In this document: in pieces, positions 7,275 to 64,000 of the stretch | How the letters are laid out: every line of letters starts with the position of its first letter | Numbering within the stretch: the stretch's first letter is position 1 | NCBI RefSeq assembly: GCF_006345805.1 | Contig: NC_043013.1 | Span: 51,274,001 to 51,338,000 of the forward strand | Direction: 5' to 3' | Length of the DNA: 64,000 nt | Source of the DNA: Octopus sinensis | Taxonomy: Eukaryota | The notes under the pieces: model-generated | The model's database searches: none | Seen by the model: the letters and a program-made list of their open reading frames with translations, nothing else | What the model was told of the DNA's origin: nothing | Position numbers and translations under genes: made by a program

Positions 7275-7447
7275 GGCGCAGGAATGGCTGTGTGGTAAGT
7301 AGCTTGCTAACCAACCACATGGTTCCAGGTTCAGTCCCACTGCGTGGCATCTTGGGCAAGTGTCTTCTGCTATAGCCCCGGGCCGACCAATGCCTTGTGA
7401 GTGGATTTGGTAGACGGAAACCGAAAGAAGCCTGTCGAATATATGTG

Positions 7448-7500
<53 letters not shown>

Positions 7501-11044: not shown

Positions 11045-11233
11045 GGCGCAGGAGTGGCTGTGTGGTAAGTAGCTTGCTTTCTAACCACATGGTTCCGGGT
11101 TCAGTCCCGCTGCGTGGCACCTTGGGCAAGTGTCTTCTACTATAGCCTCGCACCGACCAAAGCCTTGTGAGTGGATTTAGTAGACGAAAACTGAAAGAAG
11201 CCCGTCGTATGTATATATATATATATAATATAT

Positions 11234-12069: not shown

Positions 12070-12282
12070 ATGGGTGTGTACGTTTGTATCTGTGTTTGTC
12101 CCCCAACATCGCTTGACAACGGATGCTGGTGTGTTTACGCCCCCGTAACTTAGCGGTTCGGCAAAATAGACCGATAGAATAAGTACTAGGCTTACAAACA
12201 ATAAGTTCTGGAGTCGATTTGCTCGACTAAAGGCGGTGCTCCAGCATGGCCACAGTCAAATTACTGAAACAAGTAAAAGAGT
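11045..12282 (+). mobile_element. SINE family A interrupted within its internal (TA)n by a ~660-bp insert
   Basis: Head 11045-11207, tail ~12080-12282, insert ~11345-12010 flanked by (TA)n. Confidence 0.88.
11345..12010. mobile_element. Purine-rich insert of unknown class containing a degenerate hammerhead-like motif
   Basis: Bounded by (TA)n; minus strand 11509-11555 reads CTTCGAAG...CTTC-GAAAC-GTT. Confidence 0.45.
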
Positions 12283-12431
12283 ATCCTTATATCAGTTTAA
12301 TCTCTTCTCCCAGCACCCTCACCAAATCTCATAATGTAGAGTATCTCAGCGTTGTCAAATTCTATCCACACAAAATTGTTGCTGTCTAAATGTGCGAATG
12401 TTTGACTCGTTAATTCATGTTAATTAACATT

Positions 12432-12771
12432 TCAGGCATTAGACTGCGGCCATGAATCTTGTAGACGAATGAATCGATCGCAGTACGTTTTTATAGCCTG
12501 GTACTTATTCTATTGTTATGGGGTCATAAACACACCAGCACCGGTTGTCAAGCGATGGTGGAGGAAAAACACTCACACACACACGCGCGCGCGCGCGCGT
12601 GCGCTATATCACGGGCTTCTTTCAGTCCCTGTTTTTCAAATCCGCTAACAAGGCTGTGATTGGCCCGAGGCCATAGTAGAAGACACTTGCTCAAGTTGCT
12701 ACTCATTGAGACCGAACGCGGAACCATGTGGTTCGGAAGCAAACTTCTTACCACTACGCCACGCCCTGCCT
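12432..12771 (-). mobile_element. SINE family A, diverged
   Basis: Reverse complement of the family A head and tail. Confidence 0.8.
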
Positions 12772-17547: not shown

Positions 17548-17814
17548 TATTTAAGACATGAGGAATTATGTAGATTATTTCTATTATTTACATAATGTAC
17601 ATTTGACAGATATTTGTCCTCATCTTGTTTGGTGTTAACACAACGTTTCAGCTGATATACTTTCCAGCCTTCATCAGGTGTCTTGGGGAGATTTCGAACC
17701 TGGGTTCTCATTCCTAAGGTATTTTTCGATATTATTATTCAGGTCACAGCCTGGAGTCGAACTCGGAATCTTGGGGTTAGTAGCCCGAGTTCTTAACCAC
17801 TACGCCATATGCCC
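17548..17814 (-). mobile_element. SINE family D: tRNA-Ser-like head plus hammerhead-containing tail
   Basis: A-box TGGCGTAGTGG (17797-17807), B-box GTTCGACTCC (17753-17762), GGG-CTACTAA-CCC anticodon-like arm, downstream hammerhead. Confidence 0.8.
17638..17681 (-). ncRNA. Minimal type-I hammerhead ribozyme, canonical core
   Basis: ACAC-CTGATGA-A-GGCTG...CAGCT-GAAAC-GT-T-GTGT; palindromic AACGTT stem III. Confidence 0.75.
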
Positions 17815-17858
17815 TTGATGAAGGCTGGAGGTGGGTATGTCAGCCGAAATGCTGTGTT
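17815..17858 (+). ncRNA. Inverted, degenerate second copy of the same hammerhead
   Basis: TTGATGAAGGCTGG...CAGCCGAAATGCTGTGTT; C3 is T, 5' stem I lost; downstream tail to 17906 mirrors 17585-17677. Confidence 0.55.
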
Positions 17859-17909
17859 AAACAAGATGAGGACAAATATCCGTCAAATGTAAATAATGTA
17901 AATAATACA

Positions 17910-18086
17910 GGCGCAGGAGTGGCTGTGTGGTAAGTAGCTTGCTAACCAACCATATGGTTCCGAGTTCAGTCCCACTGCGTGGCATCTTGGGCAAGTGTCT
18001 TCTGCTATAGCCCTGGGCCGACCAATGCCTTGTGAGTGGATTTGGTAGACGGAACCTGAAAGAAGCCTGTCGTATATATCTATCTA

Positions 18087-19559: not shown

Positions 19560-21592
19560 TAGATATGAATACTATACTCCAGAGTATCCTGGACTCAATA
19601 TGGGCAGCATGTGCAGCATCAGTGCCACGTAAACAAAAAAAGAAGAACCGCCCCAAAAGGGCAATTTGGGAAACTTCAGCGGTCCGACTTGCCAGGAAGG
19701 AACATCGGACTGCTGAACAGGAATACAAGTTGCATAAATCAGACACCAACAGGAAGAAGCGGAATAAATCCTCCAACCATCTCAAGCAAGTGACAAAAAA
19801 TGCAGTGCTTGAATTTGAACAGTGCATAGCAGCCAATCCTGACAGCAAGGTTTTCTGGAAATATGTGCATTCAAAGCAGAGACCTCACTCTCCAGTGGGC
19901 CCTCTTCGCAACCCTCACACGAACCAGATCACTGACGACCCCAAGGAATGCGCAGAACTCATTGCCGAGTGCTATGCAAACATATTCACTGTCGAAAGTC
20001 AAAATGTACCATCTTCACCATCACTAACAGCAAACTCCATAACAACTATGGAATTTACACTGCAATGCTGCGACGTCACCTTCAAAATAAGCACAACTAT
20101 GCCTCCCCTGGTCTCGATGGAGTTACATACCTGCTTCTCAAACGTGGCAGGCACTTCCTTTTACACTAGCTTTCTATTTTCTTCCAGTACTGTCTCAACA
20201 ATGGTGCTACTCCGGAGCAGTGGAAAACTGCCAGTGTCATTCCTCTGTTCAAAAAGGGTGACCGCACATCACCTGTCAACTATCGCCCAGTCAGTCTCAC
20301 TAGCTGTATTGCAAAACTGATGGAATCGTGTGTCAGAGAAACACTCTGGAACTTCTGGAGCTCTCACAGTCTCATCCGACCCTCACAATATGGATTTGTC
20401 CCTAACTCCAGCTGCAGTGACCAGCTTGTCGAGTTCCTTGAGGACATTACTCAAATCACTGACAGTGGCTCATGGGTGGATGTTGTCTACCTTGACTTTG
20501 CTAAGGCTTTCAACTCTGTGCCACACAAAAGGCTTATGGTGAAACTCTCTGCAATGGTGTGGGGGGATGACCTTTTTAACTGGTTGAAATCCTTCATCCT
20601 CAGCCGAAAGGAGGTAGTCACAGTTCTAGGACAGCACTCTACACCATATGAGATGTCATCGGGTGTACCACAGGGATCTGTCCTTGGTCCCCTCCTGTTT
20701 GTGGCATACATTAATGACATAGATGCCAATTTAAAGAATGCCACAGTATTGAAATATGCAGACGACATCAAGCTGTACCTTGAAATCAAGAGGACTGATC
20801 CTGATGTCTACAACTCTTTCCTGCAATCAGACCTAGACACAATGCAGCAATGGATCACAGACTGGCAACTGAAACTGGCTGTGGACAAGTGTACCACCAT
20901 GCATTTTGGGAGAAAAAACCCTGCGTCCACATACTCCCTCCACAACACTGATATCAAGAAATCCTCTTGCGAGCGTGATTTGCGTTGGACAAAGCATATC
21001 TCTAAAATTGTCAAGAAGGCCGAGGGTGTCTTGGCATCACTCAGCAAGACTTTTGTTAGCCGCTCTCCAGCCATCTATTTAAAACTGTATACAGCTATGG
21101 TCCGACCACACTTGGAATTCGCATCATCAGTTTGGAATCCCTATCTTGCTCAGAACATTGACCTCCTGGAATCTGTCCAGAGACGTGCAACCAAACGCAT
21201 ACCCTCCATCAGACACCTACCATATTCTGAGCGCCTTGTTTCCCTGGGCATGGATTCACTGAAGCTCCGGCGTCTGGCGACGGACTTGGTAAGCACCCAC
21301 AAGGTTATCAACCACCTCACCAACAACAACACTGAACACCTTTTTGATCTCCATGTGTCTAACACACGTGGACATGCCTACAAAGTCAGAAAACAGCACA
21401 GCTCCCATGACTTTCGGAAACATTTTTTCACGCTCAGGGTTGCTGAAGCGTGGAATAAACTGCCTGCATCAGTTGTTGACTGCCATGACACTGCATCCTT
21501 TAAGGCCCTCATGCTTCCCGAAACCCGTCGAAACTACACCTGATTATATATACACTTTAGATGAGTTGTAGTGCACCTGAGCACTGTACACA

Positions 21593-21631
<39 letters not shown>
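19560..21631 (+). mobile_element. 5'-truncated CR1-clade LINE with (ATT)n tail
   Basis: PGLDGV, W..A.VIPLFKKGDR...NYRPVSLTS, RT motifs, C-terminal TRGH..K..RKHFF..RV...WN.LP; frameshift near 20090 and stop at 20167. Confidence 0.93.
20320..21543 (+). pseudogene. CR1 reverse transcriptase open segment (407 aa), part of a disrupted ORF2
   Basis: QYGF, YLDFAKAFNSVPH, GVPQGSVLGPLLF, YADD at 20755-20766; small deletion after ERDL. Confidence 0.9.
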
Positions 21632-21632
<1 letters not shown>

Positions 21633-22083
21633 CATTGAAATGTCTGCCAATGATGAAGTTTGCTAGAGTTTAAAGTGTTGAAGTTATGGGACAATTGGAA
21701 GGGAATTGTGATCGGGTAATTAAAGGTAGTAATTAGATTGTCAATGTTTCCACCAAATGTTTACATTAAGTCGATCTTGTCTGTTTAATACTCAAGCAAT
21801 TAATGCTAATATAGAGGGGGGGGGGTTAGGTCAGTTGGACACGTGACTGCTAAAGATGGGAGGGTCATCTCTCGATTCTCTATCTTCACCGTTGTCATCG
21901 CTATCTTCATCATGGTAGTTGTAGTTGCCGTGGTAACAGCTGTGGCGCTGGTGGTTACGTTCGCGGTGATGCTGCAGATGGTGGTGATATTTCCCCACAC
22001 TGCCTTCAAAATAAATTCGTGCATACATGCATACACACATACACGCGCACACACACATATATGTATATGTATATATTTATGTA

Positions 22084-22126
<43 letters not shown>

Positions 22127-22133
22127 TATATAT

Positions 22134-23833
22134 AATAATAGAAATATTAAAATTACTAAGTCTCTCTAAAAGAGAACAACGGCAGCGTTCCCGGAAAATA
22201 TTAGTTATCGCCATACTAATATGGCATTCTTATAAAAATAAGAAAAAAGCTGACCGCTTATTAGCTCCATGAGGCCATCGCCTTAAGTTAGCTATTTGAT
22301 ACACAATCTGTATCCATATAACCTTTGAACAAGGGAGGTCAGTCGCTCCACACTACTTGGCCGGCAGCTACAGACGCGTTTCGGGGTATTGCCCCTTTTC
22401 AATGCAGCGTAGCCAAACCAGTAGGTGTCGCTTCCGACAATCTCTGTTCAAAGGTTTTATTTACCTAGCTTCGGTGGAATACATCCACTTGTTTTCAATA
22501 ATAGAAATATTAAAATTACTAAGTCTCTCTAAAAGAGAACAACGGCAGCGTTCCCGGAAAATATTAGTTATCGCCATACTAATATGGCATTCTTATAAAA
22601 ATAAGAAAAAAGCTGACCGCTTATTAGCTCCATGAGGCCATCGCCTTAAGTTAGCTATTTGATACACAATCTGTATCCATATAACCTTTGAACAAGGGAG
22701 GTCAGTCGCTCCACACTACTTGGCCGGCAGCTACAGACGCGTTTCGGGGTATTGCCCCTTTTCAATGCAGCGTAGCCAAACCAGTAGGTGTCGCTTCCGA
22801 CAATCTCTGTTCAAAGGTTTTATTTACCTAGCTTCGGTGGAATACATCCACTTGTTTTCAATAATAGAATATAAAATTACTAAGTCTCTCTAAAAGAGAA
22901 CAACGGCAGCGTTCCCGGAAAATATTAGTTATCGCCATACTAATATGGCATTCTTATAAAAATAAGAAAAAAGCTGACCGCTTATTAGCTCCATGAGGCC
23001 ATCGCCTTAAGTTAGCTATTTGATACACAATCTGTATCCATATAACCTTTGAACAAGGGAGGTCAGTCGCTCCACACTACTTGGCCGGCAGCTACAGACG
23101 CGTTTCGGGGTATTGCCCCTTTTCAATGCAGCGTAGAGAGACTTAGTAATTTTAATATTTCTATTATTGAAAACAAGTGGATGTATTCCACCGAAGCTAG
23201 GTAAATAAAACCTTTGAACAGAGATTGTCGGAAGCGACACCTACTGGTTTGGCTACGCTGCATTGAAAAGGGGCAATACCCCGAAACGCGTCTGTAGCTG
23301 CCGGCCAAGTAGTGTGGAGCGACTGACCTCCCTTGTTCAAAGGTTATATGGATACAGATTGTGTATCAAATAGCTAACTTAAGGCGATGGCCTCATGGAG
23401 CTAATAAGCGGTCAGCTTTTTTCTTATTTTTATAAGAATGCCATATTAGTATGGCGATAACTAATATTTTCCGGGAACGCTGCCGTTGTTCTCTTTTAGA
23501 GAGACTTAGTAATTTTAATATTTCTATTATTGAAAACAAGTGGATGTATTCCACCGAAGCTAGGTAAATAAAACCTTTGAACAGAGATTGTCGGAAGCGA
23601 CACCTACTGGTTTGGCTACGCTGCATTGAAAAGGGGCAATACCCCGAAACGCGTCTGTAGCTGCCGGCCAAGTAGTGTGGAGCGACTGACCTCCCTTGTT
23701 CAAAGGTTATATGGATACAGATTGTGTATCAAATAGCTAACTTAAGGCGATGGCCTCATGGAGCTAATAAGCGGTCAGCTTTTTTCTTATTTTTATAAGA
23801 ATGCCATATTAGTATGGCGATAACTAATATTTT
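22134..23833. mobile_element. Retrozyme/Penelope-like 363-bp tandem array with a central inversion, flanked by (TA)n
   Basis: Forward units start 22134, 22497, 22860; switch at 23134-23136; inverted units start 23169, 23532; near-identical copies. Confidence 0.85.
22368..22412 (-). ncRNA. Hammerhead-like motif with non-canonical core (copies: 22731-22775 and 23092-23136 minus; 23253-23297 and 23616-23660 plus)
   Basis: CTACG-CTGCATTGAAAA-GGGG-CAATA-CCCC-GAAAC-GC-GT-C-TGTAG. Confidence 0.6.
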
Positions 23834-23869
23834 ATATATATATATATGTATATATATGTATATATATGT

Positions 23870-24530
23870 ATGTTTATGTCAGGTCACTTTCGAGTGCTAC
23901 TGGTAACATGTAACCCAGTACAACCTGTTGTATGGTCGGGCTGTCGGCGACTAAACCGGCAGCCCCACCAAGCTTGCTTGGTGAGGAGGGGATGTATTGG
24001 ACACCCTGCGGGATAAAAAACAAAACCCATCAAAGAGCGGAGAAACTCTTGAGAGTGAACGGCCATCCAATAAATGTCTTAAGGCTGTATCATGCGCGGG
24101 AACATAGAAATAATCGGACTGAATAGCCGATCGCGCGGTTAAACCATTGGGAGTGAAGGACTCCTAGCCTTTGTTAGGGCATCCTTCTAGGAGAAGGTAA
24201 CTTAGGTAACTAGGATTACTCCGACATAAAACCTGCAGCTCAGTGGTTACCGATGATGTTGACTTGCTCTTCTTTTCGGATTATGGCTGCTGTTGGCTTA
24301 GTGAGTGAGATTGATTCAGTGCACAGCCTTTCCTCACTTTAAAACAATCTTCTTGCACAGGCATTGCACGATAACAACATTGTTCATGATTGTTGATGGT
24401 GCTGTGAGTCTCAACTGAATGGCTGGCTGTAGCCTTAAAAAGCAAATAAAAGTCACATTCGATCTCAGCACCAGTAACAGTTAAGCTTCGTGCAATGGCC
24501 ATACTCGATAACGAGGGGGCAGCCATCATC
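23870..24530 (+). mobile_element. Repeat resembling an RTE LINE 5' UTR, flanked by (TA)n
   Basis: agggcatccttctaggagaaggtaac resembles the RTE 5'-UTR motif ggcaaccagtctaggagaaggaaaac (recalled); several short hairpins. Confidence 0.45.
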
Positions 24531-35463: not shown

Positions 35464-36696
35464 CATCCCATAAATAATGCAGTTTATTCAATTGCATGAA
35501 GTAAAAGTCGGAAGGGGAGGGGGAAAATACCTGCATCGATTTGTTATAAAAGCAGGTAGTAATGTTACCTTGTACTTATTCCTAGTTTTGAAGATTCCAG
35601 TACGATTTTAACGGTTATTTTTCCAAAGCCATAATGGAAGTCACAAAGGGGCATATTCGGTATATTTTGCTTTATGAGTTCAATAAAGGCAAAAACGCAA
35701 CGGAAAGTACGAGGAATATTAATGCAGTATAAAGCGGATCGGACAGTAAGTGTAAACCAATGTCAACGATCCAGAAATTCCCAGCCGAAAACTACAGCCT
35801 AGAAGACGAGCCTCGTCCTGGAAGAGCTGTAGAGATAGACGAGGATGTTCTACCAACCCTGGTGGAACAAAATCCCACCGAAACTGTTGAGGAACTAGCA
35901 GACTGGCTTGGATTTGATTATTCAACCATTTATCAACACCTGCGTGCCATCGGAAAAGCCAGCAAATTAGGTCAGTGCGTTCCTCAAAAACTTTCCGGAT
36001 CTATTCGCGCTCAGAGAGTGAATGTGTGCTCTTCTTTGCTGCCACGTCTCACCAATGAACCCTTTTTGGACCGAAGAGTGATCGGTGACGATAAATGGGT
36101 TCTCTATAAAAATGTCAAGTGCCGAAGACAGTGGGTAGGGAAAGGAGAAAGACAAACACCCCAGGCTAATAAAGGTCTTCAACCACGTAAGCTGTTGTTA
36201 TCTGTTTGGTGGGATATAAAAGGTTTAGTCCACTTTGAATTTTCAAACCCAAACCAAATGATAACAAAGGAGATCTACTGCGAGCAACTTGAGCGGCTAG
36301 AAGAACAACCATCTTTGGTTTCAAAATGAAAGATGTTCTTCCATCAGGATAATACTCGGCCACGTACCTCAGGGAAGATATTCCAAAGGCTGGAGCAGTT
36401 TGAATGGGAAACGATGCCCCTACCTACCATATTAACCGGACATTGCCCCATCTCATTATGATTTATTCAACAGTCTTCAAAATGATTTGGACGGAAAAAA
36501 TATGAATTCTGTAGACGAGGTCAGAACAGTAGTGAAGGAGTATTTTTTGTCACGGACAAGTAAAATTTGGAAGAGGGGTCTTGCAAGTCTACCAGATAGA
36601 TGGAGAATATATATTTTAGATTAAAAAAGAAATCTGCTTATCTTAATTTTGAAAAGTAAAAGTATAAAAAACGTGTTATTTATGGGATGACTCAGT
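35458..36696 (+). mobile_element. Full-length defective mariner (DD34D) transposon
   Basis: TIRs ttggatcatcccataaataa / ttatttatgggatgactcag in TA context; ATG 35634; GDDKW (D 36087), HQDN (D 36348), PDIAPSH (third D to H, 36454); stops and frameshifts. Confidence 0.93.
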
Positions 36697-37531: not shown

Positions 37532-37917
37532 GGCGAGGAGTGGCTGTGGTAAGTAGTTTGCTTACCACCACATGGTTCCGGGTTCAGTCCCACTGCGTGG
37601 CACCTTGGCAAGTGTCTTCTACTGTGCCTCGGGCCGACCAAAGCCTTGTGAGTGGATTTGGTAAACGAAAACTGAAAGAAGCCCGTCGTATATATGTATA
37701 CATATGTATGTGTGTTTGTGTTTGTCCCCCCAACATCGCTTGACAACCGATGCTGGTGTGTTTACGTCCCCGTAACTTAGCGGTTCGCCAAAAGAGTCCG
37801 ATTGAATAAGTACTAGGCTTACAAAGAATAAGTTCTGGGGGTCGATTAGCTCGACTAAAGGTGGTGCTCCATCACGGCCACAGTCAAATGACTGAAACAA
37901 GTAAAAGAGTAAAAGAG
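37532..37917 (+). mobile_element. SINE family A
   Basis: Matches family A head and tail. Confidence 0.9.
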
Positions 37918-38372
37918 TATATATATATATATATACACACATCTATGTGTGTGTTTATCCACACTAACGCACACACATGCACACACACATACATATATGC
38001 TTATGTATGTATATATAAATGTTTATTGGCGCCGGTATGAATGTGGGGTTAGAAACTTGCTTCCCAGCCATGTAGGTCTGGGTTCAGTCCCACTGTATGG
38101 CACGATGGGCAATAGAGTAGCGACTTTTTAATTTTTTTTTTTTCTGAAATTAAACATGGCCAGGGTTACTTGCTAGGATAAACGATGAGAAAACAGTGAC
38201 TAGCAGTTCATTGTCTTTTTTAACCTTCAATCCCCACCCCCACCAACTAATATTTCTATTTTCAAATGCGTCACACTTGCATCACTTTTGTGAAACTCAC
38301 ATTACGTTCGGCTTTTATGCTTCACACTATTTTGTTAGATTTCAAGGAGTTTATATATATATATGTGTATAT

Positions 38373-38582
38373 ACTCTTTTACTCTTTTACTTGTTTCAGT
38401 CATTTGACTGCGGCCATGCTGGAGCACCGCCTTTAGTCGAGCAAATCGACCCCGGGACTTATTCTTTGTAAGCCCAGTACTTATTCTATCGGTCTCTTTT
38501 GCCGACCCGCTAAGTGACGGGGACGTAAACACACCAGCATCGGTTGTCAAGCAATACTAGGGGGACAAACACAGACACACAA

Positions 38583-38623
<41 letters not shown>

Positions 38624-38788
38624 TACTACACGCTTCTTTCAGTTTCCGTCTACCAAATCCACTCACAAGGCATTGGTCGGCCAGGGGCTATAGCAGAAGA
38701 CACTTGCCCAAGATGCCACGTAGTGGGACTGAACCCGGAACCATGTGGTTGGTTAGCAAGCTACTTACCACACAGCCACTCCTGCGCC
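38373..38788 (-). mobile_element. SINE family A, full length
   Basis: Reverse complement of family A. Confidence 0.92.
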
Positions 38789-38804
38789 AAAATATATATA
38801 TAAA

Positions 38805-38863
38805 TTTGGAACCTGGGTTCTCATTCCTAAGGTAATTTTCGATATTGTTGTAATTATTATTAC

Positions 38864-38925
<62 letters not shown>

Positions 38926-38997
38926 TCACTGCCAGGAATCGAACTCGGAATCTTGGCGATAGTAGCCTGCGCTCTTAACCACTACGCCATATGCCCG
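38805..38997 (-). mobile_element. SINE family D head with expanded (AAT)n, truncated before the hammerhead
   Basis: gggcatatggcgtagtggttaagagcgc...gttcgattcc...ccttaggaatgagaacccaggttc as at 17695-17814. Confidence 0.85.
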
Positions 38998-39176: not shown

Positions 39177-39714
39177 TCTAGCAAACCTTACCACGCAGCC
39201 GTCTATATAAGATATACACACACATGTATATGTGTTTGTGAGTATGTGTGTGTATAGTAAGTATATATTGCATATACGTATATGCTTAGACATTCATGGG
39301 TTCACAGAGCATGATGGTATATAAATTAATCTGGTATATGTTATTCAGCATCAATAAATGATTGATGAGGCCCATGTGTATAGGCAGGATGTGATAGAGC
39401 TGTGCAGGCCGGGTCAAAGGTAAGTATGAGGAGCAAACAGATGTTTGTCAATCGGATATTCTCTCAAAACTAACAAGGAGTGTATGTGCCGTATTTACCT
39501 GCCCTTAGCTCTTACTTGAATTTCTTAAATTTAATCCCAAGGCAGAAAATCTGGTAAACCGATTAAGCATATTTGAAAATGGACTTTTTCATTACCGAAA
39601 TTTATATAAAAGAAAGTTATTTTCAATTACTTTGCGTGTACGTGTGTGTGTGTGTGTGTGGATGTGCAAGTGTGTTAGAGTTTGCACGTGAGGGTGTGTG
39701 TATAAATGTGTATG

Positions 39715-39760
<46 letters not shown>

Positions 39761-39849
39761 TATATATATATATACACATATATATATATGCATATATACA
39801 TATATACATATATACATACACATTTATATACATAAATATATATATACAT

Positions 39850-39880
<31 letters not shown>

Positions 39881-39929
39881 TATATATATATATGTAAGTA
39901 TATATACATATGTATATGCCCCAACTCTC

Positions 39930-41090
39930 TTTTCTTTGTACTTTGCTGCTGCTTTTACTCATGCTTTTGCTAAGGTTAGCTCTCTGGGAATATATGTCAG
40001 ATATCGATCTTCTGGCCGCCTCTTTAATCTTCGCCGATTTGCTGCCAATTCAAAGGTTTCCCAGTCTAATATTCGTGACCTCCTTTATGCAGATGACTGT
40101 GACTTAGTCACTCATACAGTGGATGACATGCAAATACTCATGAATTGCATTTCTGCTTCTTGCAGGGCATTTGGACTCAGCATTAGCCTGGGCAAGACTG
40201 TTGTAATGTTCTAGCCTGCACCAGGAAATCCATATATAGAACCAGCTATCTTGGTTGAAGGAACAATTCTGAAGGTAGTAGACAAGTTTGTCTACCTGGG
40301 CAGCACACTCAGCCGTTCTTACTCCCTGGATGAGGAAATATCTTTCAGGTTGCAGAGAGCAACTAATTCCTTCCGGTCTCTTCAGTTTCGTGTCTGGTTC
40401 CAACATGGCATCGCAAGGAGAACAAAAGTTGCTGTGTACCATGCTTGCGTACTGACATCGCTTCTCTACTCATGTGAGACATGGACTCCGTACAAACGTC
40501 AGGTAAGGGTACTTGAACGTTTTCATCAGAGATGTCTCAGACACATTCTCAATGTTGGCTGGACCTCAAAAATTCCAGACACACAGATCCTAAGGACAGC
40601 TGATATCTTGAGTATTGAGGCGATGGTGCACAAGCACCGGTTACGTTATTAGAATGAAGGATAGAAGAATTCCTAAGCAGATACTCTATGGAGAACTTGT
40701 GATTGGAAGGAGACTCCGGCAGAAACCAAGGCTGCGATTTAAGGACTGTGTCAAGTCCTCATTAAAGGCCTGTGATATGCAGAACACTGACTGGGAGAAC
40801 AATGCCTGTCATCGCCACAGATGGAGGAAGCAGGTTAAGGAGGGGATCGACACTTTTGAGAGAGCACGTATCCAGCATGAAGAACTTAAGCGAGCTGCGC
40901 GAAAGCGCACGGCTCGTATAGTGAATGGGGAAAGCTTGGTCTGCAATGTTTGCAGTCGTCTATGTTTGTCAAGTGCAGGGCTCATTAGCCACCAACGGAG
41001 CCGAAAATGCAAAATATAAGTTAGTCCTAGAGCGCACAATGTTCCTGAAGGTCGTTAATGGTCTTCCTCGGTCACGAGTGGACTGCCATC
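39930..41090 (+). mobile_element. 5'-truncated RTE (BovB-like) LINE: RT C-terminus plus C-terminal Cys/His motif
   Basis: [14 protein letters not shown] at 40086-40097, KFVYLGS, LLYSCETW, LRFKD, CNVC...SH; stop at 40212 and frameshift ~40650. Confidence 0.92.
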
Positions 41091-42868: not shown

Positions 42869-42968
42869 NNNNNNNNNNNNNNNNNNNNNNNNNNNNNNNN
42901 NNNNNNNNNNNNNNNNNNNNNNNNNNNNNNNNNNNNNNNNNNNNNNNNNNNNNNNNNNNNNNNNNNNN
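42869..42968. other. Assembly gap (100 N)
   Basis: N run. Confidence 0.99.
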
Positions 42969-47690: not shown

Positions 47691-48909
47691 AAGATTATTA
47701 ACTTTCTAGAGTTAGACGTAATTGATAACAAGGCATATATGACAGTCGCATAATTTATATTGCCGAGGTATTTTCGCCAAAATTGAGACTACGGCATGAG
47801 TCGGATTCTATTATTGATCTCCGGGTATTTATAACAGCGTGTTACACATTCAGTAAAAACTGTCTCAACTCCTGTAGCTTTAGGTTAAGATCTGATTTGA
47901 TAGGTATATATAAATGATCGAACATGTACGTTGTTGATTCCAGGTGTGCCATCTGTTAATCAGATAATTTGGGATTGAGTACGTAGTACAGAAATCCATC
48001 ATGTGAGTGTAAGATGTAGAAAATATTGAATAGAACGTTAGGCTGGAATCGGTAGCTACTTGTGTACATACGAAGCGCAATAGATATATACCTCAATTTC
48101 GCCGAAGCCAAGAGCTAAAGGTTGGCTTGATAACTTAAGTCAAACGATGTTTCGGTAAGCATTCAACGATAGTAGTGCGGTGCTGTGGTAAGTAGAGACA
48201 CGTCTCAAACTAGTGTGCGGAATTAAATTATTCTGGACATCATTGTAAATGTACATTATGTAGGAGGAGTACAGGAGCGCAAGAAGAATACCCTGAACAC
48301 AATTTAGTAAGGAGAAAGTGGCTGATGGTTAGAAATGTCTGGGAAGCATTGAGGCAGAGAAAATATGACAGAAAATATGCGAAAGAGTGCGTGAGTTAGT
48401 ATTAAAATTATCTTCAAAGGCATTGATCATAAAACGCAGACTGACGAGCGGTTTTACCGTGGGAGCTATAACGAGACAAGGCTATGTTTTAAGATGTCTT
48501 AATGAAAAATATATTACTTAAGTAAGGAATCAACGTATGGCTTAGTCTAGTTCTAAATATAGCGCAGTCTGTGTCAGTCGCGTCGATTAAAGAATAAACC
48601 GCCCCACCTCATCTGTTTTGATTTCATTTTTCTAACCTCAAGGATATCCGTTGCTAAATACAGGATAAAAATAAAACGAAAAATATTATAAGAGAAAGAA
48701 AATAACAAAACTCAATAGATAAATACATGAGATTTTTTTTTCAAACTCGTAAATAAAATGCATAAAGTTGTAATTAAATATAGAAAAAAAAGAACAAGCT
48801 ATTTTTAAACAACCAAACAGACAGCATGACATACAAATGTGAATTGCTTCAACGAGTTGTTATTTTAGGGTCTGAATAAAGCTCGATGAAATGTTTACAA
48901 AATGTACGT

Positions 48910-48926
48910 GATTATTATTATTATTA

Positions 48927-48987
<61 letters not shown>

Positions 48988-49037
48988 CATCATTATTATT
49001 ATTATTATTATCATTATTATTATTATCATTATCATCA

Positions 49038-49092
<55 letters not shown>

Positions 49093-49267
49093 CATCATTA
49101 TTATTATTATCATTATCATCATTATTATTATTATCATTATCATCATTATTATTATTATTATTATATTATTATTATTATTTTCATTATTATTATTACTATT
49201 ATTATTATTATTATTATTATTATTATCATCATTATATTATTATTATTTATTATTATTATTATTATCA

Positions 49268-49302
<35 letters not shown>

Positions 49303-49323
49303 TATCATCATTATTATTATTAC

Positions 49324-49358
<35 letters not shown>

Positions 49359-49389
49359 CATATTATTATTATCATTATTATTATTATTA

Positions 49390-49421
<32 letters not shown>

Positions 49422-49438
49422 TTCATTATTATTATTAC

Positions 49439-49506
<68 letters not shown>

Positions 49507-49515
49507 TTGTTGTTG
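48910..49515. repeat. ~600-bp (ATT)n array flipping to (AAT)n at ~49467
   Basis: direct reading. Confidence 0.97.
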
Positions 49516-49681
49516 TTGTAGGTGGTGGTATTTGTAGTAGTAGTTGTTGTTGCTAACTAGAATATTCAGAAATGCATTTATAAGACTTGAAATATGCATG
49601 TATATGTATGTGAATGTATGCATGTAAGTTTAAAGACACATATATATGTGTATGCACATATACATACATATTTATATACAT

Positions 49682-52033: not shown

Positions 52034-53074
52034 CACATGTATGTATGTATGTATGTGTAATATAAATGTGGATCCATTGAGAAAAGCGTTTTTCACTGGG
52101 TGAAGCTAACAAGATAGATAATTTCCGGTAGGATTAATTTGAAGACATAATTTGTTAAGCTAAACGTTGAATATGTTTGCTAATATAATTTTCTTGATCA
52201 GCCTTTGGTTAATATTTGAACAGATTTCCTCTCCATGTAAGGTAAACAACTTGTAGATTTTGCGAATATGTTGAGATTTCATTTCATATTTGAATGCTTG
52301 TTGCCGAAATTTGCGGTTATATTTTCTAAATATTTTCCTCTAATATGAGAACCCTCTATTTTATATAAATATGGTAAGCCATGTGTTATTTTTCCTTAAT
52401 AGTTCAATAACTTTCAAACCTTAATAATAGAAACCTGAAAATATCGATGGCAGAATAAAAACAGGAATTGCAACAAATATAATCTGAAATGAAATCAATA
52501 TCTGAAAAATAGAAGGAGGAGGGGACACATCGAAAATTTAGAAAGGAAGGGGATAGAAAAAAGAAAGAAAGAGAAAGGCACAAAGGAAAAAAGATAAGGA
52601 AAGAAACGTAAGTTTATAAATATTTGAAACGCAGAGATGTGTGAATTACGTACACATGTGTCTAAATATGCATAAACCAAATGCCTATCAGATGCTTCAT
52701 ATAGCGTTTGCCTTTCACATTAGTCTCTGATTTAGTATCCAATTTGAGACTAATTTTATATAGCTTTTTTATTATACTTCTTTGGGTTCCTGCTTGTAAC
52801 GTCTGTTTCCTTACTTGAATGTCTTAGTATTTTCAATAATTCTGTAAAAGAGCAATTCTATTACTCTTTTTTAGAGCTACTCTGACATTGACGAGAGGTC
52901 AAAGTTTCCCCCAGAAGGATTTTGGCCTGAACATTTACATAAGAGTTAATTCTGTTAAAATCTGTTAGGAGACAGGTGTGGGGTCAAATCGGTCGATGTG
53001 TTAAATCTAACTACTCGAGTTCATAAAAAATGTTAGAAATAATTAAGAAAAAAAAACAATAGAATAATCTTTTA

Positions 53075-53460
53075 TTTGCTTCAGTTATTAGAATGCGGCC
53101 ATGCTGCAGCACCACATAGGAAGTATTTTCGTCGATTGAATAGACCCCAGTACTTATTATTTTTGTAAAGATTGATACTTATTCTATCGCAGACCCTTTT
53201 GCTGAGTGACGTAAACACACCAACACCGGTTGTCAAACAGTGCAGAGGACAAACAATCGTGTGTACGTGTGTGTGTGTGCGTGCATGCATGTATGTATTC
53301 GACGGTCTCCTTTCAGTTCCCGTCCACCAAATCTACTCACAAGACTTTGGTCAGCCCGAGGCTATAGTAGAAGACAATTGCCCAAGGTACCACGCAGTGG
53401 GATTGAACCCGGAACCATGTGGTTGGGAAGCAAACATCTTGCCAACAGTCACACCAGCGC
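53075..53460 (-). mobile_element. SINE family A whose head is interrupted by a family C insertion
   Basis: Reverse complement of A; nested element at 53463-53770. Confidence 0.8.
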
Positions 53461-61080: not shown

Positions 61081-61329
61081 TGTGTGTGTGTGTGTGTATG
61101 CATCTCGATGTCATTGTGTGTTGTGTGTGTTTCTGTGTGTATATCTGCGCGTATAGTTGTGTGGATGTGTGCGCGCGCGCGTGTTTGTCTGAAAAGTCAT
61201 AAATTTTACACAATTGCAAAATCTGGCATTTTCATTGTAAAAGATAGGCAAAACAATATCAACAAATAATAAAAAAAACAAATGTGAGATAAATACAAAC
61301 AACGGCAGTAATGAGAAAACAGACTATAA

Positions 61330-61363
<34 letters not shown>

Positions 61364-61459
61364 TAATAATAATAATATGATAATAATAATAATAATAATA
61401 ATAATAAAATAATAATATATAATAATAATGATAATAATAATGATAATTAATAATGATAA

Positions 61460-61502
<43 letters not shown>

Positions 61503-61503
61503 A

Positions 61504-61553
<50 letters not shown>

Positions 61554-61713
61554 TAATGATAATTAATAATAATAATAATAATAATATAATAATTATAATA
61601 ATGATAATAATGATAATAAAAATAATAATAATAATAATAATAATAACGATAATAATAATAATATAATAATATAATATAATGATAATAATAATAATAATAA
61701 TAATAATAATATG

Positions 61714-61750
<37 letters not shown>

Positions 61751-61767
61751 TAATAATAATAATAATG

Positions 61768-61845
<78 letters not shown>

Positions 61846-61848
61846 TAA
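61330..61848. repeat. (AAT)n array
   Basis: direct reading. Confidence 0.97.
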
Positions 61849-61879
61849 AAAACAAAAAAAAACCCAAATATATGGCACA

Positions 61880-62200
61880 CGGAATACCTATTTCTATTTC
61901 TTTATTACCCACAAGGGGCTAAACACAGAGGAGACAAACAAGGACAGACATAGGTATTAAGTCGATTACATCGACCCCAGTGCGTAACTGGTACTTAATT
62001 TATCGACCCCGAAAGGATGGAATACCGCTAAGCATTTCGGCCGGCGTGCTAACGTCTCTGCCAGCTCGCCGCCTTGTTTTAACGATTCTGCCAGCTTGCA
62101 GCCTTTCATAAAATGCTTAACGGTATTTCGTCCGTCTTTACGTTCTCAGTTGAAAATTGCCTTTCATCTCTTCACGGTTGATAAATTAAGTACCAGTAGT
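61880..62200. mobile_element. Head-to-head family B SINE pieces (minus 61880-62075, plus ~62075-62200)
   Basis: Matches to family B on both strands. Confidence 0.75.
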
Positions 62201-62289
62201 GTATTGGTGTTAATCGTGGTTGTGGTTGGGGTAGGGGTAGGGCGATACAGACGACTTCCACACCGCCCAAATTTTCAGGCCTTCTGCTT

Positions 62290-62535
<246 letters not shown>

Positions 62536-63064
62536 GAATGAGAGAGCAGTGCATGCCATCAAAGTTATACTGAGTTACAAATATACGAAGCCCAGTATAC
62601 CCGTCATTTCTACCCGTCTGATAAGGGTACACAAGGCACATGCATCACAACCATATGTGCGCGACATGGTGATCTCATATCAAGATAAACAGCGCATAAC
62701 TTTACAGGTGGCGCCCAGTTAGAATTTTCTTCAGTTCGAGTAGCCCATCCTGCTCAAAAGATCCCTGAATAAGGGTTGTTTAAGGATGTCGAACAAAACA
62801 CCCCTATTTCCAAAGTTGAATTATCCAAACACCAAAGAATCCCTCTCAACACATGGCTATGATGCTCCCCCACTACTTCTGCTCATGATCAGAGATGCTC
62901 ATATCGTCAGCCACTAAGGAACATGCTCAACTGGTTAAGGTCAAACAACTGACAAGCAAATCTGTGGTATTGAGCAGAATATTTGCTGTAGCCCATCTTT
63001 TATACCAAGACAAAACAATGTACAATAAATTAAGATCAGAAGCCAAGAGAGCCACTGTCTTGTA
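62536..63064 (-). mobile_element. Probable non-LTR retroelement 3' end with (AAT)n tail
   Basis: Minus strand ends ...gcatgcactgctctctcattc followed directly by (AAT)n; bounded by trinucleotide arrays. Confidence 0.5.
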
Positions 63065-63124
<60 letters not shown>

Positions 63125-63127
63125 CAT

Positions 63128-63187
<60 letters not shown>

Positions 63188-63238
63188 CACTACTAATACT
63201 ACTACTACTACTACTACTCTTCTTATTATTATTATCAT

Positions 63239-63275
<37 letters not shown>

Positions 63276-63345
63276 TCTTCTTCTTCTTCTTTCTTCTTCT
63301 TCTTCTTATTATATTATTATTATTATTATTATTATTATTATCATC
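63065..63345. repeat. Compound trinucleotide ATT-ACT-ATT-ACT-TCT-ATT
   Basis: direct reading. Confidence 0.95.
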
Positions 63346-64000
63346 GTTATAGACTCAAGAGAGGAGGCAGCCGTGACAGTAGAAGGCACGTGACTTCAGT
63401 ATGTAATTGTTGTCTACTGTGTTTTCTCTTTGGAACATCTGTCTGACAAAGAAATAAAAACGAAATAGCGACAACGAGGGATGAATTCTCTCTAAATTTG
63501 TCATAACGTCTCAAAAGATATCAGTGCTTTGTAAAATATATCGCCGTTATGTTAAGGCATACCGAAAAGTCGTCCAATGTCATCCAAGGTCACGTCAACA
63601 CGAGAAAACAAATACATGCACACGTACACACAGATACAATCGCGCACCCATTTTTTATATTCACATATAAGGGGCGACTTTATATTTATGGCTTCTTGGG
63701 TTTTTTTTCTTTGGTTTTTTTTTTTCTCAAAGAGAAAGGGTTGGTTCCTAAGTGAAAAAACAAAGTGCTTTTCGTTGGAATTTAGACATCATCTACAGTT
63801 AACCGTATACAATTACATACTCAAGTCCCTACCACACCCTTAAGAAAGTGGAGAAAACCACCGGCCCTTAAAAAAGAAAAAGATGATAAAATCTAGTTGT
63901 TTGAAAGCTATTTAGAATTTTAACATTTGTAAATTCACAGAGCTGCTTACGCACATACATACACATGTATACAATCTCTCTCTGTCTCTCTATCTCTCTC

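What the first reader, a model, noticed from the sequence alone, without database searches (positions are those of the whole stretch)
22134..23833. Candidate new retrozyme: 363-bp tandem array with a non-canonical hammerhead in every unit
Seen: ~4.7 near-identical 363-bp units with no real ORF, bounded by (TA)n. Each unit holds GGCUACG-[CUGCAUUGAAAA]-GGGG-CAAUA-CCCC-GAAAC-GC-GU-C-UGUAGCU, i.e. a 7-bp stem I, a 4-bp stem II, a palindromic ACGCGU stem III and a GUC cleavage triplet. The core reads CUGCAUUGA instead of CUGANGA. The motif is enclosed by a perfect 12-bp inverted repeat (aacctttgaaca 22320-22331 / tgttcaaaggtt 22445-22456) and flanked by hairpins tgtcg-gaag-cgaca and gtgga-atac-atccac. 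Established: metazoan non-LTR retrozymes are tandem ~150-400-nt repeats with one minimal hammerhead per unit and yield abundant circRNAs. Inference: a cephalopod retrozyme whose catalytic core is either an undescribed expanded variant or a fixed inactive one; near-identity of the units implies recent amplification.
Basis: partly seen in the sequence, partly recalled or inferred. Interest (0 to 1): 0.92.

Follow-up and report, generated by a model that had tools for sequence, protein, structure and literature searches.

The report
Octopus retrozyme with U3-A8 hammerhead
This is a young insertion of a small non-coding mobile element (a "retrozyme") in an octopus-like genome: each 363-bp unit carries a complete self-cleaving hammerhead ribozyme of a known, rare core variant, so it is a new member of a known family and not a new kind of ribozyme.

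Summary
The quoted sequence is present, with a 363-bp period and (TA)n on both sides. It is not one 4.7-unit head-to-tail array. It is two opposed arrays: 2.76 units with the motif on the minus strand (22134-23136) and 1.93 units with it on the plus strand (23134-23833). They are joined head-to-head at a 3-nt microhomology.

The "expanded core CUGCAUUGA" is a mis-parse. With helix I read as GCUGCA/UGUAGC, the motif is a standard metazoan type I hammerhead: 6-bp helix I, core UUGAAAA, 4-bp helix II with a 5-nt loop, GAAA, one A-U pair closing a palindromic CGCG loop, and GUC cleavage. The only departure is the U3-A8 covariant of the C3-G8 pair. That variant is already described as natural and active.

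A covariance model built only from four experimentally used retrozyme hammerheads finds exactly these five motifs (32 bits, E about 6e-7; next hit 13 bits). The unit RNA folds far better than shuffles (z = -6.5). Two motifs are predicted to form the dimeric helix III.

The locus looks like twin-primed reverse transcription of a circular or multimeric RNA into a (TA)n target. No other family copies, cleavage or circular RNA could be tested. Verdict: new member of a known kind, moderate interest.

The parts
22057..22133 (.). Left flank: (TA)n / (TATG)n microsatellite, presumed target
   Evidence: TRF; sequence
22134..23136 (-). Left arm: 2.76 units of 363 bp, ribozyme (sense) polarity on the minus strand. 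The sense 3' end is at 22134, abutting (TA)n; the 5'-truncated end is at the centre. The innermost unit has two 1-nt homopolymer deletions.
23134..23136 (.). Head-to-head junction: the trinucleotide TAG is shared by both arms (3-nt microhomology)
23134..23833 (+). Right arm: 1.93 units, sense polarity on the plus strand. The sense 3' end is at 23833, abutting (TA)n. It is 100% identical to the left-arm units.
23834..23879 (.). Right flank: (TA)n / (TATG)n microsatellite
23257..23298 (+). Type I hammerhead: GCUGCA-UUGAAAA-GGGG-CAAUA-CCCC-GAA-A[CGCG]U-C|UGUAGC. Predicted cleavage between 23292 and 23293.
   Evidence: descriptor; CM R1 32.0 bits, E 6e-7; pair probabilities
23620..23661 (+). Type I hammerhead, identical copy. 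Predicted cleavage between 23655 and 23656.
23091..23132 (-). Type I hammerhead, identical copy, complete although only 4 nt from the junction. Predicted cleavage between 23097 and 23096.
22730..22771 (-). Type I hammerhead, identical copy. Predicted cleavage between 22736 and 22735.
22367..22408 (-). Type I hammerhead, identical copy. Predicted cleavage between 22373 and 22372.
23293..23655 (+). Predicted 363-nt monomer RNA (the circle after ligation). It forms a highly self-paired branched rod closed by the 16-nt inverted repeat at 23205-23220 / 23334-23349.
   Evidence: MFE -122.7 against -88.3 +/- 5.3 kcal/mol for shuffles, z -6.5; circular MFE -117.7, 63% paired
22373..22735 (-). Predicted 363-nt monomer from the left arm. 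A second monomer of 361 nt spans 22736-23096.
   Evidence: coordinates derived

Best explanation
The locus is a single, young insertion of a non-LTR retrozyme, a non-coding non-autonomous retroelement, in an octopod genome.

Shown from sequence:
- Each 363-bp unit encodes one complete type I hammerhead with the classic metazoan architecture. Only the tertiary C3-G8 pair is replaced, by its U3-A8 covariant.
- Helix III is a single A-U pair closing the palindromic loop CGCG, so one motif cannot form a stable helix III. Two motifs can pair ACGCGU with ACGCGU to form a double hammerhead.
- The rest of the unit folds into a stable branched rod.

Inferred from established retrozyme biology:
- A multimeric transcript self-cleaves after GUC through the dimeric form.
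- The 363-nt monomers are ligated by a host RNA ligase into circles, in which the lone ribozyme is held inactive.
- The circle (or a multimer) serves as template for a reverse transcriptase supplied in trans. The most likely source is a Penelope-like element; a LINE is not excluded.

Inferred from this locus:
- Both 3'-OH ends of a break in a (TA)n microsatellite primed cDNA synthesis at AU-rich sites of the template (unit positions 1 and 62).
- Each cDNA ran round the template more than once (2.76 and 1.93 units).
- The two cDNA ends were joined at a 3-nt microhomology, which gave the head-to-head inverted arrays.
For: 1. Hammerhead identity. A covariance model built only from four retrozyme hammerheads that were cloned and transcribed in vitro (mussel, coral, two axolotl; sequences from the supplement of PMC7229834) hits exactly the five motifs, full length, at 32.0 bits and E about 6e-7. 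The next best hit in 128 kb is 13 bits.
2. Descriptor test. A descriptor allowing C3-G8 or U3-A8 finds the five motifs. It gives no hit in 200 window shuffles or 5000 unit shuffles. It recovers three of those published hammerheads with the same layout: 6 bp, 7 nt, 4 bp with a 5-6 nt loop, GAA, A-[palindrome]-U, C, 6 bp.
3. Register. The re-parsed helix I has pair probability 0.93-0.98 and helix II 0.98 in the 700-nt arm transcript. The MFE of the monomer leaves UUGAAAA and GAAACGCGUC unpaired.
4. Dimer. A cofold of two ribozyme domains forms the intermolecular ACGCGU helix, at -61.7 against 2 x -27.8 kcal/mol.
5. Core variant. U3-A8 is a natural covariation, and such ribozymes are active in vitro (PMC3088659). 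It also occurs in S. mansoni PLE hammerheads (PMC4209133).
6. Retrozyme features. The 363-bp unit compares with 350-390 bp in mussel. GC is 41%, below the 45-50% limit. There is no ORF. At least two consecutive complete hammerheads lie on each arm, which is the working criterion of Li et al. 2026. Fold z-score is -6.5.
7. Architecture. Partial tandems with an adjacent inverted 5'-truncated copy and a microsatellite bias, including (TA)n, are hallmarks of PLE integration (Craig et al.). The outer ends here are asymmetric and both are sense 3' ends. The junction has TAG microhomology.
8. Partners. Recently active PLE families are reported in Octopus vulgaris (PMC13282606). A second, PLE-type minimal hammerhead lies at 17637-17682 in this window.
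Against: - Only one locus is available. All five ribozyme copies are identical, so there is no covariation or conservation evidence from this family.
- No other copy could be found. The unit ORF is absent from the protein collection, and a metagenome scan gave 0 hits.
- No Rfam hammerhead model reports the motif, even at E <= 10 on an 81-nt slice. Rfam also misses the canonical-core minimal hammerhead at 17.6 kb, so this is weak evidence.
- Self-cleavage of this U3-A8 ribozyme, a unit-length RNA and a circle are all untested. Related single-base-pair helix III ribozymes cleave poorly as monomers (axolotl 6% in 1 h), and PLE minimal hammerheads cleave weakly in vitro.
- No target-site duplication can be read in a microsatellite.
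- (TA)n covers about 4% of the window, so landing in it by chance is not negligible.
- There is no PLE coding sequence in the window. The only nearby reverse transcriptase is a CR1-like LINE.
- No promoter was identified. The sense strand has T6 and T5 runs that would stop RNA polymerase III.
- My descriptor was written after I had seen the motif. The covariance-model test does not share that weakness.
Confidence: 0.72

Rival explanations
1. It is an inert minisatellite or satellite that descends from a retrozyme or a PLE terminal repeat. The hammerhead is a fossil (U3-A8 or the weak helix III makes it inactive), and the inverted arrangement arose by replication template switching or local inversion, not by retrotransposition.
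For: - No expression or cleavage data exist.
- Rfam models do not detect the motif.
- PLE-associated hammerheads cleave poorly in vitro.
- Li et al. 2026 describe retrozyme arrays growing locally like satellites.
- There is only one locus in 64 kb.
Against: - All invariant positions except the covarying 3/8 pair are intact in all five copies.
- The motif scores 32 bits against a model of working retrozyme ribozymes.
- U3-A8 hammerheads are reported active.
- 1.7 kb without a single substitution and a 675-bp perfect palindrome argue for a very recent event, not a decaying fossil.
- Both outer ends are sense 3' ends lying in the same microsatellite, which retrotransposition explains directly.
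Confidence: 0.13
2. It is the pseudo-LTR part of an autonomous Penelope-like element, present as solo terminal repeats after 5' truncation, and not a separate non-autonomous family.
For: - PLE insertions are heavily 5'-truncated, form partial tandems with inverted copies, and carry hammerheads in their pLTRs.
- Retrozymes and pLTRs are phylogenetically intermixed in Xenopus.
Against: - The period is 363 bp with nearly three complete consecutive units. A partial tandem of a 3-4 kb PLE would repeat at the element's full length.
- The ribozyme has the canonical retrozyme layout (4-bp helix II, no extra base after A9). The PLE minimal layout is the one seen at 17637-17682, which scores only 8 bits with model R1.
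- No RT or GIY-YIG coding sequence adjoins it.
Confidence: 0.08
3. It is a foldback-type DNA transposon or MITE whose long terminal inverted repeats are built from tandem subrepeats. Alternatively, the palindrome is an assembly artefact.
For: - There are long, perfectly complementary arms built from subrepeats, flanked by TA-rich sequence.
- Palindromes are a known failure mode of long-read assembly, and PLE-type structures are noted to trouble assemblers.
Against: - The outer ends are not symmetric. The left arm ends at unit position 1 and the right arm at position 62, so 61 nt at the left end have no inverted partner. A transposase-recognised terminal inverted repeat would be symmetric.
- The arms differ in length and phase, and the two flanks are different unique sequences. 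That is not what a missed-adapter palindrome produces.
- Neither idea explains a complete hammerhead in every unit.
Confidence: 0.05

Closest known systems
Mytilus galloprovincialis non-LTR retrozyme (Mg353; Cervera & de la Pena 2020, PMC7229834)
   Same: - Mollusc host.
- Non-coding tandem unit of 350-390 bp, AT-rich and highly self-paired.
- Type I hammerhead with a 6-bp helix I, a 4-bp helix II with a 5-nt loop, GAAAC, a palindromic CG-only loop 3 (CGCGCG there, CGCG here), GUC cleavage and a U1.1-A2.1 pair.
   Different: - The core is CUGAUGA in mussel and UUGAAAA here (U3-A8).
- There is no detectable sequence similarity outside the ribozyme (blastn E > 0.3).
- Circular RNA and cleavage are shown for mussel and untested here.
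Axolotl HHR_Amex1 / newt satellite 2 hammerhead
   Same: Helix III is a single base pair capped by a palindromic tetraloop, so the ribozyme is expected to work as a dimer and to be nearly silent as a monomer. The unit is about 330 bp.
   Different: - Vertebrate host.
- Canonical C3-G8 core.
- Arrays of up to hundreds of units.
U3-A8 hammerhead variants (S. mansoni Cercyon PLE minimal hammerheads, PMC4209133; bacterial and phage examples, PMC3088659)
   Same: The same covariation of the tertiary 3-8 pair inside the catalytic core.
   Different: The Schistosoma examples have the PLE minimal architecture (long helix II, extra base after A9, mostly single copies). The architecture here is the canonical retrozyme type, in a tandem unit.
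Penelope-like element insertion structure, and L1 twin priming
   Same: - Partial tandem plus an adjacent inverted 5'-truncated copy.
- Both 3' ends at the target.
- Microhomology at the internal junction.
- Insertion into a microsatellite. The L1 twin-priming comparison rests on my own knowledge.
   Different: - No coding region.
- The repeated unit is a 363-nt template copied more than once per arm, which points to a circular or multimeric RNA template.

Membership tests
Hammerhead ribozyme, type I | Strict core consensus CUGANGA between helices I and II | tested here: not met
   The core reads UUGAAAA: positions 4-7 and 9 fit, position 3 is U and position 8 is A.
Hammerhead ribozyme, type I | Positions 3 and 8 able to form the Watson-Crick tertiary pair (C3-G8 or the documented U3-A8 covariant) | tested here: met
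   U3 and A8 are present in all five copies. The covariant is documented as natural and active.
Hammerhead ribozyme, type I | G12 A13 A14, the A15.1-U16.1 pair, H17 at the cleavage site, and G10.1-C11.1 | tested here: met
   CCCC-GAA-A[CGCG]U-C; the first helix II pair is G-C.
Hammerhead ribozyme, type I | Three helices round the core, with helix I open-ended | tested here: met
   Helix I pair probability 0.93-0.98 and helix II 0.98. Helix III forms only between two motifs, as in newt and axolotl ribozymes.
Hammerhead ribozyme, type I | Match to curated Rfam hammerhead models | tested here: not met
   No hammerhead family is reported at gathering score or at E <= 10. The models also miss the canonical-core minimal hammerhead at 17.6 kb.
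Hammerhead ribozyme, type I | Site-specific self-cleavage | not testable with these tools
   Needs in vitro transcription.
Metazoan non-LTR retrozyme | Tandem repeat unit of about 150-450 bp with low GC (<45-50%) | tested here: met
   363 bp, 41% GC; criteria.
Metazoan non-LTR retrozyme | [quoted passage not shown] | tested here: met
   Three on the left arm and two on the right arm; criterion.
Metazoan non-LTR retrozyme | No coding capacity, no LTR, PBS or PPT | tested here: met
   The longest ORF is 92 aa with no homologue. No LTR-like structure is present. PBS and PPT were not searched formally.
Metazoan non-LTR retrozyme | Unit RNA predicted to be highly self-paired | tested here: met
   z = -6.5; 63% of bases paired in the circular fold.
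Metazoan non-LTR retrozyme | Abundant unit-length circular RNA in vivo | not testable with these tools
   No transcriptome is accessible.
Metazoan non-LTR retrozyme | Multicopy dispersed family coexisting with PLEs | tested here: inconclusive
   No second copy lies in the window and none could be retrieved. PLEs are reported in O. vulgaris, and a PLE-type hammerhead lies at 17637-17682.
Autonomous Penelope-like element | ORF with RT and GIY-YIG endonuclease between pseudo-LTRs | tested here: not met
   There is no such ORF in or next to the array.
Foldback DNA transposon | Symmetric terminal inverted repeats at the outermost ends | tested here: not met
   The outer ends fall at unit positions 1 and 62; 61 nt on the left are unpaired.

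The most novel reading that the evidence does not exclude
This is a currently active cephalopod retrozyme family whose ribozyme carries the U3-A8 core, which would make it invisible to searches that require CUGANGA. Under this reading cephalopods, and perhaps other animals, hold an uncounted set of ribozyme-processed circular RNAs. This perfect, asymmetric head-to-head multi-unit insertion would then be a direct footprint of rolling-circle reverse transcription of a circular RNA primed from both strands of a (TA)n break.
Probability: 0.3. Interest if true: 0.6.

Novelty: new member of a known kind. Interest (0 to 1): 0.4.

Why it matters
Retrozymes are known in cnidarians, a mussel, amphibians, fish, reptiles and insects. 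I found no report of one in a cephalopod in the searchable literature.

Two points go beyond adding a host. First, the core variant would be filtered out where hammerheads are required to match CUGANGA / GAAAY / RUH, as was done for the published coral hammerhead family alignments. Surveys with that requirement may therefore undercount retrozymes. Second, the insertion has no substitutions and has readable ends and a readable junction. That gives a clean natural example for working out how these elements are reverse-transcribed and integrated, a step the field still describes as unresolved.

It is not a new ribozyme class and not a new core.

Tried and rejected
- Rfam at gathering score on the whole window, at E <= 10 on 3 kb, and on an 81-nt slice: no hammerhead. 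I judged this uninformative because the canonical-core minimal hammerhead at 17.6 kb is missed as well.
- tRNA search: none.
- Other copies in the window: none.
- Exact look-up of the 92-aa unit ORF and of the LINE RT: not on record.
- Homology search with the unit ORF: no hit.
- Metagenome scan with the ribozyme pattern: 0 hits.
- A 20.7-kb Octopus sinensis locus fetched through the LINE homologue shares the LINE and SINEs but not the 363-bp unit.
- Similarity of the unit to the mussel, coral and axolotl retrozymes outside the ribozyme: none.
- Pol III box A, box B and TATA scans: nothing convincing.
- I ran no further search on the shorter unit ORFs, because the longest ORF had already found nothing.
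- Rejected: the foldback transposon and PLE pseudo-LTR readings, for the reasons given under the rival explanations.
Full report
**What is in the sequence**

The interval 22134-23833 holds a 363-bp repeat between two (TA)n/(TATG)n microsatellites. It is not one head-to-tail array. TRF reports 2.8 copies at 22134-23136 and 1.9 copies at 23134-23833. The repeat finder and blastn show the second block is the reverse complement of the first, with 675-nt arms that are 100% complementary.

Two full units on the left, the full unit on the right and both partial units are identical base for base. The only differences are two 1-nt homopolymer deletions in the innermost left unit.

The quoted 49-nt motif, the 12-bp inverted repeat (16 nt with one mismatch) and the two small hairpins are all present. 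The longest ORF in the unit is 92 aa with a TTG start, and it has no relative among 5.8 billion proteins.

**Re-reading the ribozyme**

That left a 12-nt "core" of CUGCAUUGAAAA. The same 3' strand pairs equally well with the hexamer that directly precedes UUGAAAA, giving GCUGCA/UGUAGC. The motif then reads:

helix I GCUGCA - U3 U4 G5 A6 A7 A8 A9 - helix II GGGG/CCCC with loop CAAUA - G12 A13 A14 - A15.1 [CGCG] U16.1 - C17 | UGUAGC

Thermodynamics favours this register. It is the one present in the minimum-free-energy fold of the 363-nt monomer, where UUGAAAA and GAAACGCGUC stay unpaired.

Every invariant hammerhead position is then canonical except positions 3 and 8. These form a Watson-Crick tertiary pair in the active structure, and here they are U and A instead of C and G. 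Perreault et al. state that C3 and G8 covary to U3 and A8 in several natural hammerheads, and that such ribozymes had already been shown active in vitro (PMC3088659). Cervera and de la Pena found the same covariation about 1,300 times in Schistosoma mansoni Penelope-like-element hammerheads (PMC4209133). The core is therefore a known variant. It is neither an expanded core nor necessarily a dead one.

**Is it more than chance, and does it resemble working retrozyme ribozymes?**

I ran two tests.

- Descriptor test. I wrote a descriptor with these terms: helix I of at least 5 bp next to the core; core YUGANRA with a pairing 3/8; an optional extra base; helix II of at least 4 bp; GAAA; a palindromic loop 3; U; H. 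It finds the five array motifs and one other site in the window. It finds nothing in 200 dinucleotide shuffles of the window or 5000 shuffles of the unit. Applied to the retrozyme constructs that Cervera and de la Pena transcribed in vitro (supplement of PMC7229834), it recovers the mussel, coral and axolotl ribozymes with the same layout as the octopus motif. That layout is a 6-bp helix I, a 7-nt core, a 4-bp helix II with a 5-6 nt loop, GAA, A-[palindrome]-U, C, and a 6-bp strand.
- Covariance-model test. The descriptor was written after I had seen the motif, so I also built a covariance model from four published ribozymes only and searched the whole window with filters off. The five octopus motifs are the top hits: full length, in the re-parsed register, 32.0 bits, E about 6e-7. 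The next hit scores 13 bits.

Rfam's own hammerhead models report nothing, even at E <= 10 on an 81-nt slice. They also miss a canonical-core minimal hammerhead elsewhere in the window. I therefore treat that negative as a limit of those models for ribozymes without a real helix III.

**Predicted RNA behaviour**

Helix III is one A-U pair closing the self-complementary tetraloop CGCG. This is the arrangement described for axolotl HHR_Amex1 and newt satellite 2. Those ribozymes cleave poorly as monomers (6% in an hour) and efficiently as dimers.

A cofold of two 75-nt ribozyme domains forms the intermolecular 6-bp ACGCGU helix while keeping helices I and II. The energy is -61.7 kcal/mol against 2 x -27.8 for separate monomers.

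The monomer between cleavage sites (23293-23655) folds at -122.7 kcal/mol, against -88.3 +/- 5.3 for shuffles (z = -6.5). As a circle it folds at -117.7 kcal/mol with 63% of bases paired. That is the "highly self-paired" character reported for retrozyme circles.

Only one polarity carries a ribozyme. This fits a DNA-encoded retrozyme and not a replicon with ribozymes in both polarities.

From memory, and not tested here: the UAC bulge just 5' of the 6-bp helix I and the CAAUA loop 2 resemble the UAC bulge and CAAAUA loop that make the tertiary contact in the Schistosoma ribozyme.

**Locus architecture and how it probably arose**

The ribozyme polarity is the minus strand in the left arm and the plus strand in the right arm. 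Both sense strands therefore start at the centre and end at the outer (TA)n.

The outer ends fall at different unit positions (1 and 62). Each lies at an AU-rich stretch...CUAUUAUU and ...AAUAUUUU, both followed by (AU)n. The inner ends are cut at arbitrary positions and share the trinucleotide TAG.

This matches what Craig et al. describe for Penelope-like-element insertions: partial tandems, an inverted 5'-truncated copy next to the 5' end, and a bias for microsatellites, including (TA)n.

My inference has four steps. Both 3'-OH ends of a break in the microsatellite primed cDNA synthesis on retrozyme RNA. Each cDNA passed unit length (2.76 and 1.93 units), which needs a circular or multimeric template. 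The two cDNA 3' ends then annealed at TAG/CTA. Finally each was filled in on the other.

On this reading the identity of the units reflects repeated copying of one template in one event. The absence of any substitution in 1.7 kb, and the survival of a 675-bp perfect palindrome, indicate that the event is recent.

A foldback DNA transposon is unlikely because the outermost 61 nt on the left have no inverted partner. An assembly artefact is unlikely because the arms differ in length and phase and the two flanks are different unique sequences. Long reads should still confirm the junction.

(TA)n occupies about 4% of this window, so a chance landing in it cannot be dismissed.

**Host and neighbourhood**

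- Just upstream (19565-21543, plus strand) lies a 5'-truncated CR1-like LINE (RVT_1, E = 2.4e-30).
- Its closest named relative is Octopus sinensis LOC118762190, at 73% amino-acid identity.
- The fetched O. sinensis locus shares this LINE at 80.6% nucleotide identity and several SINE families at 70-90%, but not the 363-bp unit. The window is therefore from an octopod or a close relative.
- Octopus vulgaris is reported to hold 31 recently active Penelope-like families (PMC13282606), so plausible helpers exist in the group.
- The window has no PLE coding sequence.
- It does contain a second hammerhead with a canonical core and the PLE minimal layout at 17637-17682 (see the items noticed in passing).

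**Comparison and membership**

The element meets every sequence-level criterion for a metazoan non-LTR retrozyme:

- unit size;
- low GC;
- no coding capacity;
- at least two consecutive complete type I hammerheads per array (criterion of Li et al. 2026);
- a strongly structured unit RNA.

It fails the literal CUGANGA consensus and the Rfam thresholds. It meets the pair-preserving form of the core.

Three features could not be tested with these tools: self-cleavage, the circular RNA, and a multicopy family with covariation. I file it as a new member of a known kind. It is the first cephalopod example I could find in the searchable literature, and it combines the canonical retrozyme ribozyme architecture with the U3-A8 core.

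**Limits**

All family-level tests failed for lack of accessible cephalopod sequence. The assignment of the helper enzyme (PLE or LINE), the promoter and the activity of the ribozyme remain inferences.

Noticed in passing
window 17582-17907 (hammerhead at 17637-17682, minus strand): A second, unrelated hammerhead with a canonical core and the PLE minimal layout: GACAC-CUGAUGA-A-GGCUGG-AAAGUAUA-UCAGCU-GAAA-[CG]-U-U|GUGUU. It sits in one arm of a ~95-nt inverted repeat whose other arm holds a decayed antisense copy. The whole 316 nt folds as a long hairpin (z = -13.9). Between the arms is a tRNA-like, SINE-like segment that recurs at 38804-38996 (90-93% identity). It looks like head-to-head PLE terminal fragments. 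Rfam misses it.
   Followed up: partly
window 19565-21630: A 5'-truncated CR1-like LINE. Two adjoining ORFs carry an RVT_1 domain, followed by an (ATT)n tail at 21593-21630. It is 80.6% nt identical to a copy on Octopus sinensis chromosome CM016860.1.
   Followed up: partly
window 17920-18067, 11055-11209, 7285-7448, 12094-12753, 37541-38778, 53067-53445 and others: Many copies of SINE-like families shared with the O. sinensis locus L001 at 69-86% identity. They produce the recurring spurious peptide ...[15 protein letters not shown]... in ORF lists.
   Followed up: no
window 35760-36329 and 39573-41019: A mariner-type transposase fragment (Transposase_1, E = 6e-20) and a second degraded LINE reverse-transcriptase fragment.
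   Followed up: no
window 42869-42968: A run of 100 N: an assembly gap next to a (CA)n/(TA)n tract.
   Followed up: no
window 21900-21990: A GTN-rich imperfect minisatellite (GGTGGT/GTTGTA-like) between the LINE tail and the left (TA)n. It gives a low-complexity ORF rich in Val and Ala, at 21843-22169.
   Followed up: no
window 48886-49521 and 61259-63446: Long trinucleotide (ATT/TAT-type) low-complexity tracts that create poly-Tyr, poly-Ile and poly-Leu pseudo-ORFs on both strands.
   Followed up: no
window 23293-23655 (sense strand of the unit): The sense RNA contains U6 and U5 runs (from GCTTTTTTCTTATTTTTATAAG). These would terminate RNA polymerase III, and no box A or box B is present. If the element is transcribed, Pol II or read-through is more likely.
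   Followed up: partly
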